A stretch of DNA of 63,424 bases, the filler included, from Choristocarpus tenellus KU-1152 (taxonomy: Eukaryota > Protista > Phaeophyceae), in the NCBI GenBank assembly GCA_964200185.2. It is 12 parts of 12 records of this genome, joined end to end, with 100 filler letters (N's around TTAATTAATTAA, not from the genome) between each part and the next. Parts side by side here need not be neighbours in the genome. Positions count along the whole stretch, not along the records: positions 52,950 to 57,336 come from CAXNAD020014791.1; 11 more parts are not named here. One strand, 5' to 3'. This document shows, one piece after another, positions 52,695-57,476 of the stretch. The stretch's first letter is position 1, and every line of letters starts with the position of its first letter. The notes below the pieces were generated by a model. It had not been told where the DNA came from. It ran no database searches and saw nothing but the letters and a program-made list of their open reading frames with translations. The position numbers were made by a program, and so were the translations under genes.

Positions 52695-53374
52695 TAATAT
52701 GTATATATATTTAGTACTTCATTTAAATATGGGATAATCCACCAGTTCATTTGTTGATAGTGAGACTGTTTAATAGTAGAAAAATGTTGAATCGAAGGAA
52801 TACCATTCTGCTGATGTTATAAATGGGCACTCTGGTGTAGATCCAGATCNNNNNNNNNNNNNNNNNNNNNNNNNNNNNNNNNNNNNNNNNNNNTTAATTA
52901 ATTAANNNNNNNNNNNNNNNNNNNNNNNNNNNNNNNNNNNNNNNNNNNNCTGTCCTACACCTGAACATAGAGTTGTAGGGGATGATACCCCCATCCCTCT
53001 TTCTTGGATGGCAGGATTAACATTTTTTTTTGCAATTTTTAGCTTATGTCTGGTTGGCATTGATAACCCTAACCCTTACTTACTCACTTCAAGTACTAAG
53101 ATCATTTGTGGGTACCTGCTTTTCCACGAGTATAGTACTCTTTGGAGGGTACTAGACAAAACGAAGTGAGGGACAGGAAGAGAAATTTCAAAGGTGCGTG
53201 AGTGCTAACCCACCCTTTAGTAGTTGAACGATTGAATATATTCATTGTGCCTTGTACCTTGTACCTTGTGCGAGTCCGCTGTAGTAGTAGTAATAATACT
53301 ACTCAAGGTTCAATTATTTCCCAGTACTTTTATGCTATCTCCTGTAACATCGATTGTACTGTGGACTTCAACAG

Positions 53375-56300
53375 GTGCACAGAGGCCCCCTAGACCATGG
53401 TTTAGTGTTACCCCGCTGTTTGGCAAGTGTACACCATGGAGGTAGTGGTACAACTGCAGCAGTACTGAGAGCTGGCATTCCACATGGTGAGGGTGGAGTG
53501 AGGTGTGGCATCACGCCTAGTATGTGACGCCATGTATGACATTATGCTGGTATTATCACCAACTAGGCTGATTGTGCATTAGTGTGGTCTAATATAATTA
53601 GTCATGTGCTGCCAGGCATTGTTGTGTGATCTTGTACACAAGTGTACTAACGTATGCAGAATTTGCTCAGAGAGTAGGAAGAAACCTGTTAGTAGATATA
53701 CCTGTAAGGGATGTAACATCATCCACTGTTGATCTGTTGTACTATACCACACATAAGAAGGTTTTAAGTCATTGTAAGTACCTTGGAGTGTTGGTCTGGT
53801 CTGTGATTGATAGTGCTAAAGAGGCAGTTATATGTGTGGTTTCTACAGCACTCTAGGCATGGATCGATGGTGTATGGTCAATGAGTAATGATGGATATGT
53901 TAATTATTGACGGTTCTGGCGCTGGCACAAGTGGAAGATATAAGTCAATACATGCGTATGTATGTAGTATATATATTATGTATTTATGTGCATATAGTGT
54001 CCACAGGCACGGTAAGTAGTATGTGAAGCCACCCAACCGTTGTGTGCTATAGTAGGGTGCTTCTAGAGCTCTACACAACATTTTTGTTAGTCCTGGTAGC
54101 TTCAAATACCACCTTCCCACCTTTGCACACACTTTGAGCCAAGCACGCCCTCTTCCCATTTATTTGTGTATATTAAATACTTTTAATTTCTCTAATGTGA
54201 ATCGTTCCCCTATTGTTCACCCATCCTATAGATTAATCAGACTAACCAATAGATTAATCAGACTAACCAATAGATTAATCAGACTAACCAATAGATTAAT
54301 CAGACTAACCTATAGATTAATCAGACTAACCAATAGATTAATCAGACTAACCTACTTAACATGTGCGCATTGGCCAAATAACTTCATAAACCTTTTCAAG
54401 TTGTGTGTCCTCAGCACTTGGATCAGTTTTTTTGGTCCGAACGCATGTCACATCTGGGCTTGGGAACCGTGCTGGAGCGGTCCCTCTTTGTGGGAACTGG
54501 TCCTAATCGATCCCGTGGCACGTCTCCTACTACTATTGATAACTGCAGTCCCAGCCTGGTGGCCAGGGTCACGTCTGCTCTCCTCTCTGCTACCACACCA
54601 CAGGTACCAACCTCAATATTGTATTACCAATCAATTTTGGCAAGGGTTCCAACTTCAGCAATTACTCATATGGTTAATGTTACCGTAACATCGATAAACA
54701 TTGTGAGAAAGTAAACAGTTTTTTCACTCTAGATTATTTGTCTTTCTTTCCTACCCACTGGATGATGTTGCTGTGATGGGAGAGACTCAATGTTGTGTAC
54801 CTAGCACCAGGTCAGGACAGGTGAATGTTCAGTCCACTTTTGTTAGGTACGAAGGGTGATCAGTGGTTGTAGTGATAAGGGATAGTCCATAGGTGGTTCT
54901 CTTTTTGAAATACTGATTAATTGATGATTTCTTCGTCTTTCTGCAACTTGGTAACACCTGTCTGCTAAGGACATTTGTGGCAGAAGCTTTGTTGATGCCA
55001 CTGCTGGACCATGTACTTGATCTTTTCCTTTCTGAAAATTCAGTACTTTCTTCAAGAATTGAATATGTCCCACTGTACTGTATGTACCCCATTGTACCTA
55101 CTCTAGGTCCGTCTACGCTGTGCCTGTCTAGGTGTCAAGATCAGGGCTGAGGATAGCGTGACAAACATTCTCACAGCAATAGAGGATTTCGTGGTCCTTC
55201 AATCTGCTTCAAGGGATCCAACAAATGTTCAGATGGGTGCAATGTTCAGTACAGCACCAAAGTACCTAACAAGAACCCTTGCTACCATCAAGCTAAAAGA
55301 GGACAGGGGGCAAGAATCAATCTCGGAACCAGCAGTGGACCATGGACCTGAAGAAGAATCAGTACCAGAACCAACAGGGGACCATGGACAAGAAACAATA
55401 GCGGCAATTGTGGGAAAGGACCAACAAAGTACTGATGTTATCTTAGACAAAGGGGTGAAGGAGAGGCTGTTGACCTTGACGGATCTCCCAAATGATCTCA
55501 GTGTGTGGTGTATTGATGGGGCAATGGAGGAGACACTGTTTGTGTACAAAGAGGTGTTTGAAGCAGGTACCTACTTTCAACATCGTATTGCCTTGGGAGA
55601 GGGTGATACGGTATGGGATGTAGGTGAGGTCAAGATATGTGATGGATGTACTTTTTTATTCATATCATGCATCTGTTCTGTCTTGTTTTTTTTCTGTTGC
55701 CTGGTAGTGTATGCCAAAGTTTGTCTGTAGCGCCCACATTATTTCAGTGTTAGTTTTGTTGCAGTTGTTTGCAGCTGAAATCAAATCACTACTGTAGCAC
55801 TCTTGCAGTGTAGATTTACCCTTTCGACCTGTTGGGGATTGTTATTATTGTCATTATTATTTTGGATGCTTTGCGACAATGCAGTGGACACCTTCAACCT
55901 ACCTACCTTCATCGTACCTTTATGGAGTTGGAGCACTGTTCAACATGATGCAGGCCACTCTCTGTTTCTGCCAACGCTGCACTTCAGCATTAAAGATAGC
56001 TCTTATCAATTGCTTTGTTTTGGTTAGGATTTTTATGTTATTTGGACACTAGGCTAGTCCAACTAGCCAGCATTGTAATGTTGTGTTGTCTACTCTTTTC
56101 CCAACTGGCTATCACTGTGCATGCATGGCACCTCTCTTGCTCTTTTGGGTGGTACGTGAATGCTTGTTAGTTTTTTCCATTATGCTATACATTTCGGTAT
56201 TGAAAATGTTTCTACTGCTAGAGCGTCATTTCACTTCATCTTGACATAATAATTGCACAGGTGCCAACATAGGTCTTTTCAGCATCCAATCAGAGCTCAG

Positions 56301-56384
56301 TGTGGACACACCAGACAGTCTCCACCTCTTTGCATTTGAACCCATCCCAGTTACTCGAGAGGCCCTTCGGAGAAATCTTGACAT
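53375..56384 (+). CDS. GT1 (sterol-glucosyltransferase/UGT80-like) glycosyltransferase C-domain fused to an FkbM-family SAM methyltransferase, partial (exons 53375-53486, 54401-54603, 55107-55623, 56261-56384)
   Basis: [32 protein letters not shown]|[22 protein letters not shown]...|...[11 protein letters not shown]...LPNDLSV...[31 protein letters not shown]|GANIGLFS...FAFEPIP...ALRRN; all joins GT-AG and in phase. Confidence 0.9.
54228..54353 (+). repeat. 21-bp minisatellite ATAGATTAATCAGACTAACC(A/T) x6, intronic
   Basis: Read directly; no spacers. Confidence 0.95.
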
Positions 56385-57247
56385 GTGAGAAGCCATGGAA
56401 TTGCATCAGTTGAACTTAGAATCCTTCCAGTTGTTCAGTGAAGCAAGTGTTGTTTTGTGCCCCTGCCGTGGTCTTGTAGGAGAATATTGATAGGCCAAGA
56501 GCTGACAAGAATAGGGTGCATATTGCAAAATAACACTATTCAATACTGTGCCATGAATAGCACCGTTCTGATAGATGTTAGAGCTTCACCATTGCCTCTA
56601 AGTATGACATATAGCTAGCCACCTTTGTGTAGCTCCGAGGCATCATTAATCAACTTCCTCCTGCTGTAATCCCAGACAAAACAATGCTGCCTGGGATTAC
56701 AGCATGTATCTATCCGTCAACACCTCAATCTCAGCTTCTGAGAATGTTTGCCTGGTATGACTTGGTTTTGCTTGCACTAGTTATTGACCAACAAATGACC
56801 CACTGTTTTAACCTCCTACTTGGGTGTACAAATTAGATCTTTTCAGTGCATTTCCTGGACCTCAAGGTTGGGAAGATAATCATTTGTTAGAGGTCAGCCT
56901 CACAACCGATCACTTAGCCTTGTACTCTCTCAAAGATGTCTATTTCCTTTCAATATTTATGCTTGGTTACTTGTGTGATACACTATAGTGTACAAGAGAG
57001 AAGTGTTGAGACTGTCGTGCCTTGACTTGATAGATATTTTCCGTTTACTATAGGTGTTGTAGCAGGACCATGAGTTTGGACCGTGAGGTGTGTAGAACAG
57101 TTCCAGATTATATACTCTGGAATACTGTACGTTGGACAATACATTAGTCAGTATGTTGGGTATAATTGTTGGCTGAATGACAGGAGAGATCAAGGAGCTC
57201 ACATTGTGAAGCAAGGCTCACTACGGTATCTGAAGTTGGATAACTCT

Positions 57248-57476
57248 GGCCCAAAGTATCTGGGGGGGGGGGGGGGGATTTTTTGCGGTACTTGCAAGTC
57301 CCCCTTTGCTATGTTTTTTCCAACCCTCATAACCCGNNNNNNNNNNNNNNNNNNNNNNNNNNNNNNNNNNNNNNNNNNNNTTAATTAATTAANNNNNNNN
57401 NNNNNNNNNNNNNNNNNNNNNNNNNNNNNNNNNNNNATGGACAGCCGCCACCCCCCCCCCCCAGATACTTCGAACC
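57248..57476. mobile_element. MITE family 2 ends at two contig edges (57248-57336 and 57437-57476)
   Basis: GGCCCAAAGTATCTG(n) and C(n)AGATACTTCGAACC. Confidence 0.7.

What the first reader, a model, noticed from the sequence alone, without database searches (positions are those of the whole stretch)
53375..56384. Glycosyltransferase (GT1) - FkbM methyltransferase fusion: candidate bifunctional tailoring enzyme
Seen: four in-phase exons give the GT1 nucleotide-sugar-binding signature ([17 protein letters not shown]...P...DQFFW) and the terminal helix ([11 protein letters not shown]). Within one exon (55107-55623) this runs through an acidic linker into an FkbM-type domain (LPN.L.V...ET.FVYKEVF...[19 protein letters not shown]...AFEP.P). 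Because the junction is inside a single exon, it is not a gene-merging artefact. Known: such GT1s glycosylate sterols, lipids or macrolides, and FkbM O-methylates FK506/FK520, with relatives in bacterial PKS/NRPS pathways. Inference: one polypeptide that glycosylates an acceptor and O-methylates the sugar or aglycone, implying an uncharacterised methylated glycoside or glycolipid pathway. I cannot check whether this architecture has been described; both ends of the gene are missing.
Basis: partly seen in the sequence, partly recalled or inferred. Interest (0 to 1): 0.8.

Follow-up and report, generated by a model that had tools for sequence, protein, structure and literature searches.

The report
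Glycosyltransferase–FkbM methyltransferase fusion, brown alga
The piece holds four exons from the middle of a brown-alga gene that joins a sugar-adding enzyme to a methyl-adding enzyme in one protein; the same fusion occurs in many algae and is listed in databases, but I found no paper saying what it makes.

Summary
The piece is a whole 4,387-bp contig of the brown alga Choristocarpus tenellus. It carries four GT-AG exons without stops (53375-53486, 54401-54603, 55107-55623, 56261-56384). They encode the C-terminal half of a GT1 glycosyltransferase, a mildly acidic linker, and the first ~95 residues of an FkbM-type SAM methyltransferase. The domain junction lies inside exon 3. A homologous exon occurs in more than ten other assemblies.

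The exons map consecutively onto annotated proteins that carry both Pfam domains. These come from Discosporangium, Ectocarpus (1,016 aa, misnamed "amino acid adenylation domain protein") and Chrysoparadoxa. The fusion also occurs in Prymnesium, Botryococcus and an intronless metagenomic ORF, and as partial models in Phaeothamnion and Epipyxis. It is therefore a real, old, alga-wide family that is catalogued but apparently uncharacterised.

The glycosyltransferase domains cluster with a 534-aa land-plant protein, apart from GRAM-type sterol glucosyltransferases and bacterial GT1s. That plant protein is probably the orphan UGT713B1 type, which lacks sterol glucosyltransferase activity. The methyltransferase belongs to the FkbM subfamily also embedded in NRPS/PKS as O-methyltransferase domains.

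A bifunctional glycosylate-then-O-methylate enzyme is the best reading, but the substrate is unknown. Both gene ends lie off the contig, and no RNA data were available.

The parts
53375..53486 (+). Exon 1 in the piece. It encodes GT1 C-terminal domain beta-strand and the start of the nucleotide-sugar motif (..[20 protein letters not shown]). It ends one base into a codon.
   Evidence: AG/GT splice sites. PF06722 at E 7e-7. 86% identity to P0162 residues 191-227. The same exon start is seen in L001 and L002.
54401..54603 (+). Exon 2. It encodes the rest of the sugar-donor motif (V)[11 protein letters not shown] and a variable loop, and ends in phase 0.
   Evidence: 60% identity to P0162 residues 229-294. 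tblastx match to L001 4152-4271.
55107..55196 (+). Exon 3, first 30 codons. This is the last helix of the GT1 domain ([17 protein letters not shown]..).
   Evidence: [12 protein letters not shown] are invariant in 11 homologous exons. The stretch aligns with the C-terminal helix region of the plant GT P0295.
55197..55460 (+). Exon 3, codons 31-118. This is the poorly conserved, mildly acidic inter-domain linker.
   Evidence: 15 D/E against 9 K/R, pI 4.7. There is no conservation across homologues. The equivalent stretch in the P0166 model has pLDDT below 55.
55461..55623 (+). Exon 3, codons 119-172 plus one base. This is the N-terminal sub-domain of the FkbM-type methyltransferase ([29 protein letters not shown]).
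   Evidence: It matches a motif shared by stand-alone and NRPS/PKS-embedded FkbM domains. In the model it folds as three short strands followed by a helix.
56261..56384 (+). Exon 4. It encodes SAM-binding motif I (D-V-)G-A-N-I-G, the acidic AFEP motif and RRNL. It ends two bases into a codon at a gtgaga donor. The rest of the domain lies beyond the contig.
   Evidence: 67% identity to P0162 residues 439-477, which lie inside its PF05050 match 436-624. NCBI's own partial model P0001 makes the same E3-E4 junction.

Best explanation
The piece is an internal fragment, about 290 of roughly 700-1,000 codons, of a nuclear gene of Choristocarpus tenellus. The gene encodes a two-domain enzyme. Its N-terminal part is a GT-B fold family-1 glycosyltransferase. 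A flexible linker joins it to a C-terminal FkbM-family, SAM-dependent methyltransferase.

Shown: the architecture, the exon structure, its conservation across algae, and intact cofactor-binding motifs in the parts present. Those motifs are HHGGSGT..DQ for the nucleotide sugar, and DVGANIG plus AFEP for SAM.

Inferred: the protein is cytosolic, because orthologues start directly with the first Rossmann strand MK..AFGTRGDVQP and have no leader peptide. The GT domain would move a sugar from a nucleotide sugar onto a small or lipophilic acceptor. The tethered methyltransferase would then O-methylate that glycoside, on the sugar or nearby. The result would be a methylated glycoside or glycolipid that has not been identified. 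The acceptor is probably not a bulk membrane sterol.
For: Exon and splice evidence.

Homologous exons: the exon that contains the junction is found in 10 Logan assemblies at 30-34% identity and 99-100% coverage in nine of them, all ending at ..WDVG followed by an intron. Seventeen representatives score E <= 1e-30 against the exon profile.

Whole orthologous genes: brown-alga contigs L001 and L002 carry the later FkbM exons, including DLLKIDVEGAE with PF05050 at E 6e-4 on that exon alone.

Full-length proteins with PF06722, PF05050 and TIGR01444 over their cut-offs: Discosporangium 693 aa, Ectocarpus 1,002 and 1,016 aa, Chrysoparadoxa 594 aa, and ENA P0166 696 aa. By the precomputed Pfam hits listed with the search, Prymnesium parvum 781 aa and Botryococcus braunii 877 aa also carry PF05050 and PF06722. 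An ESM Atlas cluster of 64 eukaryotic members carries both domains.

Structure: the P0166 model has mean pLDDT 90.1, two well-folded domains and a low-confidence linker at 412-442. Its GT half resembles GtfB, UGT51, GtfD and OleD at Foldseek E about 1e-20. The methyltransferase model has pLDDT 84.8 and pTM 0.86, with a class-I SAM-MT fold whose matches include 2py6 'Methyltransferase FkbM'.

Catalytic residues: the invariant methyltransferase residues E, Y, G-A-x-x-G, E-P, N, K-x-D-x-E are kept in fused proteins. Those that fall in E3 and E4 are kept in the window.

Precedent: an FkbM-type DxGxNxG domain in an NRPS is assigned as the candidate O-methyltransferase for O-21 of hangtaimycin (PMC10624959), and FkbM genes in prasinophytes are predicted to methylate glycans (PMC5082852).

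Gene neighbourhood: in one Acidobacteria MAG, a separate FkbM gene, a gene with a weak, sub-threshold match to PapA-type acyltransferases, and a GT1 gene lie side by side.
Against: There is no biochemical or genetic evidence for any member. No RNA run was available for this organism, so splicing rests on comparative evidence and on NCBI's partial model. Both ends of the gene lie off the contig, so completeness in Choristocarpus itself is not shown. One nearly invariant Gly of the methyltransferase N-terminal part is Arg in the window (HRI against HGI). pTM 0.65 for the two-domain model gives no defined interface, so substrate hand-over between the domains is only assumed. Structure searches gave no substrate-level clue for the methyltransferase.
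Confidence: 0.7

Rival explanations
1. It is a sterol 3-beta-glucosyltransferase with an added methyltransferase, and it makes methylated steryl glycosides.
For: The best solved-structure matches by sequence are yeast UGT51 sterol glucosyltransferase, 5gl5 and 5xvm, at E 7e-18 to 2e-19. Automatic names of many bacterial relatives and of the plant relative say 'sterol 3-beta-glucosyltransferase'.
Against: In the GT-domain tree, the fused proteins and the plant 534-aa protein form their own clade (SH-aLRT 100, long stem). It is separate from the GRAM-domain sterol GTs. The plant orphan UGT713B1, which that protein most likely represents, showed little or no sterol glucosylation in yeast or E. 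coli expression, and its mutants had normal steryl glucosides (PMC4265157). GtfB, GtfD and macrolide GTs match about as well as UGT51.
Confidence: 0.12
2. The two domains are joined but do not act on one product. The methyltransferase may methylate an unrelated substrate, or one domain may be a non-catalytic scaffold or regulator.
For: The linker is long, unconserved and predicted to be disordered. The model gives no confident inter-domain interface (pTM 0.65). Land plants keep the GT alone.
Against: Cofactor-binding and invariant residues are kept in both domains across distant algal lineages. The fusion itself is retained across ochrophytes, a haptophyte and green algae, which is the usual mark of coupled function. 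GT1 and FkbM genes are neighbours in a bacterial cluster.
Confidence: 0.13
3. The Choristocarpus copy is a pseudogene remnant, an assembly chimera or a contaminant, not a working gene.
For: The contig is only 4.4 kb, and both gene ends are missing. NCBI's model for it is a 124-aa fragment. No RNA data were found. A poly-G run sits near the contig end.
Against: The four exons have no stops and have canonical splice sites. Conservation is high in the domains and low in the linker, which is the pattern of purifying selection. Exon boundaries are the same as in other brown algae. Its closest relative among those compared here is Discosporangium, as expected from taxonomy. Three DNA runs of one study hold 58-99% of the words.
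Confidence: 0.04
4. It is part of an NRPS-like 'amino acid adenylation domain protein', as the Ectocarpus siliculosus orthologue is named.
For: That is the name given in NCBI and UniRef to P0164. The methyltransferase N-terminal motif matches many NRPS megasynthases best.
Against: Pfam finds no AMP-binding, condensation or PP-binding domain in P0164, P0163, P0162 or P0166. It finds only PF06722 and PF05050. The NRPS matches cover only the embedded FkbM domain. The name is a transfer error.
Confidence: 0.01

Closest known systems
Annotated but uncharacterised orthologues: Ectocarpus siliculosus 'amino acid adenylation domain protein' (P0164, 1,016 aa), Discosporangium mesarthrocarpum P0162, Chrysoparadoxa australica P0044, and Prymnesium parvum 'Methyltransferase FkbM domain-containing protein' (P0283)
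   Same: They have the same two-domain order, GT1 then FkbM. The window exons align colinearly at 42-86% identity to P0162. The exon that contains the junction is shared among brown algae.
   Different: The window holds only the middle ~290 residues. Linker length varies: the spacing from HHGG to DVGAN is 185-256 residues. None has a known function.
Land-plant orphan GT1 of the UGT713B1 / At5g24750 type (represented here by the Aristolochia 534-aa protein P0295)
   Same: The GT domains are homologous end to end: 28% identity over residues 2-508 of P0077, E 1e-52. They share AFGTxGDVxPL, THAAH, NxFALEGWHxAE, DVxHWxWP and HHGGSGxTAAAL..DQFxWAE. They form one clade with SH-aLRT 100.
   Different: The plant protein has no methyltransferase domain. 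That P0295 is the UGT713 type is inferred from its length, its naming and its position outside the GRAM-type sterol-GT clade. It was not tested against At5g24750 itself. The paper took UGT713 to be limited to embryophytes (PMC4265157).
Sterol 3-beta-glucosyltransferases UGT51 / UGT80 and natural-product GT1s (GtfA/B/D, OleD, CalG)
   Same: They share the GT-B fold, the N-terminal G-x-R-G-D motif and the C-terminal HHGGxGT..DQ donor motif.
   Different: Identity to the P0166 model is 14-24% among the 50 matches shown, and the sterol GTs sit in a separate clade. None carries a fused methyltransferase. The acceptor cannot be transferred from them.
FkbM family methyltransferases (PF05050 / TIGR01444), including the FkbM-type domains embedded in NRPS and PKS
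   Same: They share the DxGxNxG motif (DVGANIG), AFEP and KxDxEG. They also share the N-terminal extension LPNGL..ET..VYxEIFExRxY..GIxLxxGDxVxDVGAN, seen in stand-alone and A-MT-T / DH-MT embedded domains. Such a domain is assigned as the candidate O-methyltransferase in hangtaimycin biosynthesis (PMC10624959).
   Different: Here the domain is fused to a glycosyltransferase, not to an assembly line. Only its first third lies in the window. Its substrate is unknown.

Membership tests
Glycosyltransferase family 1 (GT-B, EryCIII/UGT-like) | C-terminal nucleotide-sugar binding motif HHGGxGT ... P ... DQ | tested here: met
   The window's E1 and E2 read [30 protein letters not shown]. E1 alone hits PF06722 at E 7e-7, 29.7 bits, just under the 31.7 whole-protein cut-off. 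Orthologues score 40-60 bits, over the cut-off.
Glycosyltransferase family 1 (GT-B, EryCIII/UGT-like) | Two-Rossmann GT-B fold with the N-terminal GxRGD acceptor-side motif | tested here: inconclusive
   This part is not in the piece. It is met in orthologues: AFGTRGDVQPL is invariant, PF03033 matches in P0166, and the model matches GtfB and UGT51 at E 5e-21.
FkbM family methyltransferase (PF05050 / TIGR01444) | SAM motif DxGxNxG followed by an acidic (A/V)xEP motif | tested here: met
   The window's E3 and E4 read [11 protein letters not shown] ... LFAFEPIP. These columns are invariant in alignment A3.
FkbM family methyltransferase (PF05050 / TIGR01444) | Complete domain, including the KxDxEGxE motif and C-terminal strands, scoring over the curated cut-offs | tested here: inconclusive
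   E3 and E4 alone gave no Pfam hit, and the rest of the domain is off the contig. It is met in orthologues: PF05050 at 48-65 bits against a 22.7 cut-off, and TIGR01444 at 69-92 bits against 37.7 in P0044, P0164 and P0166. The later exons are seen in L001.
Sterol 3-beta-glucosyltransferase (UGT51 / UGT80) | Placement within the sterol-GT clade | tested here: not met
   The fused proteins and plant P0295 form a separate clade (SH-aLRT 100), apart from the GRAM-GT clade.
Sterol 3-beta-glucosyltransferase (UGT51 / UGT80) | Sterol glucosylating activity | not testable with these tools
   The only published evidence bears on the likely plant relative UGT713B1, which showed little or no activity (PMC4265157).
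Nonribosomal peptide synthetase (name carried by the Ectocarpus orthologue) | AMP-binding adenylation domain, carrier and condensation domains | tested here: not met
   There is no PF00501, PF00550 or PF00668 hit in P0164, P0163, P0162 or P0166.

The most novel reading that the evidence does not exclude
The fusion acts as a 'Rosetta stone'. It would mark a conserved, still unknown pathway in algae that makes an O-methylated glycoside of a non-sterol acceptor. By homology of the GT domain, it would also give the first functional lead for the orphan land-plant enzyme UGT713B1, which would then work with a separate methyltransferase or on an unmethylated version of the same acceptor.
Probability: 0.3. 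Interest if true: 0.6.

Novelty: new variant of a known kind. Interest (0 to 1): 0.42.

Why it matters
Both domains belong to well-known enzyme families. Their fusion is kept across brown algae and other ochrophytes, a haptophyte and green algae, so the two activities are very probably coupled. No product is known.

This gives a concrete, testable handle on an uncharacterised methylated glycoside or glycolipid in ecologically important algae. It also bears on a plant glycosyltransferase, UGT713B1, that has been without a function since 2014.

It exposes annotation errors as well. The Choristocarpus model is a 124-aa fragment with no domain call, and the Ectocarpus orthologue carries a wrong NRPS-type name.

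It is not a new kind of biochemistry, and the architecture is already present in public databases.

Tried and rejected
- Pfam on single exons: only E1 gave a hit. E2, E3 and E4 alone gave none.
- Joined spliced protein: not built or searched. All searches were exon by exon, by reference, or used stored orthologues.
- RNA evidence: the run search listed only three DNA-type holders from one study and no RNA. Read laying was not used because contigs of DNA runs cannot show splicing.
- More exons in the piece: none found by tblastx.
- Rfam: no match in the piece.
- Solved structures by sequence: no match for the methyltransferase domain. Foldseek gave only generic class-I methyltransferases and the uncharacterised FkbM entry 2py6, so no substrate clue.
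- Prokaryotic fusion: a scan of GTDB species representatives with P0166 found nothing. The narrower alignment returned 80 loci, 79 of them matching only the GT part of the query. The one locus that matched both domains (L056, Acidobacteria) has separate FkbM and GT1 genes. No prokaryotic fusion was seen, but this is not proof of absence.
- Literature: searches for the fusion, for FkbM in brown algae or stramenopiles, and for the two Pfam accessions together found no description.
- The NRPS reading was rejected.
Full report
**What the piece is**

The usable range 52950-57336 is a complete 4,387-bp contig. NCBI's partial protein model for it (P0001, 124 aa, 100% identical) names the organism as Choristocarpus tenellus, an early-branching brown alga. 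G+C is about 39-46% throughout. Three DNA-type runs from one study hold 58-99% of its words, and no RNA run was listed.

**Check of the observation**

Reading the sequence and testing the boundaries gives four exons, each with an AG acceptor and a GT donor:

| Exon | Coordinates | Length |
|---|---|---|
| E1 | 53375-53486 | 112 nt |
| E2 | 54401-54603 | 203 nt |
| E3 | 55107-55623 | 517 nt |
| E4 | 56261-56384 | 124 nt |

- The phases fit. E1 ends one base into a codon, which E2 completes as Val. E2 ends in phase 0. E3 ends one base into a Gly codon, which E4 completes. E4 ends two bases into a codon at a gtgaga donor.
- No exon has a stop codon.
- E1 and E2 spell [30 protein letters not shown], the GT1 donor-binding motif. 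E1 alone hits Pfam PF06722 at E 7e-7.
- E3 runs from the last GT helix ([17 protein letters not shown]) through an 88-residue linker into [27 protein letters not shown]. The linker is unconserved and mildly acidic, with 15 D/E against 9 K/R and pI 4.7.
- E4 continues with (G)[21 protein letters not shown].

Every search used single exons by reference, or stored orthologues.

**Is the fusion real?**

- A word search with E3 alone found ten products called on Logan contigs (P0002-P0011). They show 30-34% identity and 99-100% coverage in nine of the ten. Each has the same GT helix ([17 protein letters not shown]), a variable linker and the same methyltransferase start. Each ends at ..GDTVWDVG, where the reading frame runs into an intron.
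- A profile of these exons (A2), searched against 1.84 billion representatives, gave 17 hits at E <= 1e-30. Whole-profile hits included named partial proteins of Ectocarpus fasciculatus, Phaeothamnion confervicola and the chrysophyte Epipyxis.
- Two 10-11 kb brown-alga contigs, L001 and L002, hold the whole orthologous gene in the same exon order. It starts with an N-terminal exon reading MKAAVIAFGTRGDVQP. Later FkbM exons include DLLKIDVEGAE, with PF05050 at E 6e-4 on that exon alone.
- The window exons map consecutively onto Discosporangium P0162, at residues 191-227, 229-294, 295-437 and 439-477. This confirms each splice junction.

Full-length annotated proteins with both PF06722 and PF05050 over Pfam's cut-offs, and TIGR01444 over NCBIfam's where tested, exist in these organisms:

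| Organism | Protein | Length |
|---|---|---|
| Discosporangium mesarthrocarpum | P0162 | 693 aa |
| Ectocarpus sp. | P0163 | 1,002 aa |
| Ectocarpus siliculosus | P0164 | 1,016 aa |
| Chrysoparadoxa australica | P0044 | 594 aa |

Outside the ochrophytes, the fusion shows up in several more places:

- The same architecture occurs in Prymnesium parvum (781 aa), Botryococcus braunii (877 aa) and several marine metagenome proteins (by the Pfam hits listed with that search).
- One metagenome protein, P0166, is an intronless 696-aa ORF on a compact 70% G+C contig.
- An ESM Atlas cluster of 64 eukaryotic members, mostly Chlorophyta where the phylum is known, carries both domains.

An artefact of gene merging is excluded.

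**What the domains are**

*Glycosyltransferase.*
- By sequence, the nearest solved structures are yeast UGT51 sterol glucosyltransferase (E 7e-18 to 2e-19) and the vancomycin-group GtfA/B/D.
- A model of P0166 has mean pLDDT 90.1, with two well-folded domains. The linker at 412-442 has low confidence, and pTM is 0.65, so there is no defined inter-domain packing. Its GT half superposes on GtfB, UGT51, GtfD, OleD and CalG enzymes.
- The nearest non-fused relative is not a bacterial GT. It is a 534-aa land-plant protein (Aristolochia P0295) that aligns end to end with the Phaeothamnion GT domain at E 1e-52.
- In a GT-domain tree, all fused proteins plus this plant protein form one clade (SH-aLRT 100, long stem). 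That clade is separate from GRAM-domain sterol GTs and from bacterial GT1s. The ochrophyte fused proteins form a subclade with 99% support.
- Plants have three sterol-GT-like GT1s. The short one, UGT713B1/At5g24750 (520 aa), showed little or no sterol glucosylation in vitro, and its mutants have normal steryl glucosides. Its function is unknown, and it was thought to be limited to embryophytes (PMC4265157).
- I infer that P0295 is of this type, but I could not compare it with At5g24750 itself.

*Methyltransferase.*
- Alignment with stand-alone and NRPS/PKS-embedded FkbM domains shows a shared N-terminal extension. It also shows invariant E, Y, G-A-x-x-G, E-P, N and K-x-D-x-E. The residues that fall in E3 and E4 are present in the window. 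One nearly invariant Gly is Arg there.
- The model of the Chrysoparadoxa domain is confident (pLDDT 84.8, pTM 0.86). It is a class-I SAM methyltransferase. PDB neighbours are generic methyltransferases plus the uncharacterised FkbM entry 2py6.
- The best non-fused matches to the N-terminal motif are A-MT-T and DH-MT modules of megasynthases. Such a DxGxNxG domain is assigned as the candidate O-methyltransferase in hangtaimycin biosynthesis (PMC10624959).
- This similarity explains why the Ectocarpus orthologue is misnamed 'amino acid adenylation domain protein'. It has no adenylation, carrier or condensation domain.

**How it most likely works**

- Shown: one reading frame joins a GT1 with intact donor motifs to an FkbM methyltransferase with intact SAM motifs, through a flexible linker. 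This arrangement is conserved across distant algal groups.
- Inferred: orthologues begin directly with the first Rossmann strand, so the enzyme is probably cytosolic. GT1 enzymes of this structural neighbourhood glycosylate small or lipophilic acceptors. FkbM-type enzymes are O-methyltransferases. The simplest coupled reaction is therefore glycosylation followed by O-methylation of the glycoside.
- A single bacterial locus (Acidobacteria MAG, L056) has a separate FkbM gene, a gene with a weak, sub-threshold match to PapA-type acyltransferases (E 2e-4, 21 bits against a cut-off of 30), a GT1 gene and another methyltransferase gene side by side. This is weak support for a GT1/FkbM partnership in glycolipid-like chemistry.
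- No prokaryotic fusion was found among 80 related loci, 79 of which matched only the GT part.
- The acceptor remains unknown.

**Novelty and verdict**

The gene fragment is a true member of an alga-wide GT1-FkbM fusion family. The family is already in public databases with automatic domain calls. I found no paper that describes or characterises it.

It is a new variant (a domain fusion) of known enzyme kinds, not a new kind. Its main value is as a lead to an unidentified methylated glycoside in algae, and as a functional hint for the plant orphan UGT713B1.

Limits:
- Both gene ends are off the contig.
- There is no RNA evidence for this species.
- The UGT713 link is inferred.
- No function has been tested.

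Noticed in passing
window 54228-54352 (intron 1): There is a perfect-looking minisatellite: six copies of the 21-bp unit ATAGATTAATCAGACTAACCA, 98% matching. It lies just upstream of exon 2.
   Followed up: partly
window about 57263-57280: There is a run of about 17 G near the 3' end of the contig, followed by T-rich sequence. It could be a natural homopolymer or a sequencing/assembly artefact that ended the contig.
   Followed up: no
window about 55377-56384: NCBI's own model for this contig (P0001, 124 aa, no Pfam call) starts in the middle of exon 3 and omits exons 1 and 2 and the GT helix. The public annotation therefore hides the fusion.
   Followed up: yes
P0164 (Ectocarpus siliculosus orthologue): It is named 'amino acid adenylation domain protein' in NCBI and UniRef but has no adenylation domain. 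The name seems to have been transferred from NRPS proteins that share only the embedded FkbM domain.
   Followed up: yes
L003:919-6637: The intronless fused gene P0166 sits on a compact 70% G+C contig. A GDSL lipase/esterase gene lies 34 bp away on the opposite strand, and an APH-type kinase gene lies further along. This may hint at acylated glycolipid chemistry. The organism is unknown. P0166 groups with Prymnesium and metagenome proteins in the tree.
   Followed up: partly
L056:2866-6998 (Acidobacteria MAG): This looks like an operon of four genes: an FkbM methyltransferase, a gene with a weak sub-threshold PapA_C match (E 2e-4), a GT1 glycosyltransferase and a Methyltransf_24 gene. GT1 and FkbM are separate genes here.
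   Followed up: partly
L001:766-1227 and L002:853-1293 (minus strand): In both brown-alga contigs, a gamma-tubulin complex protein gene fragment (PF17681) lies just upstream of the fused gene on the other strand. The neighbourhood is therefore conserved.
   Followed up: no
P0295 / PMC4265157: The paper took the plant UGT713 clade to be limited to embryophytes. The tree here puts a plant protein, probably of that type, together with the algal fused proteins. The clade would then be much older than stated.
   Followed up: partly
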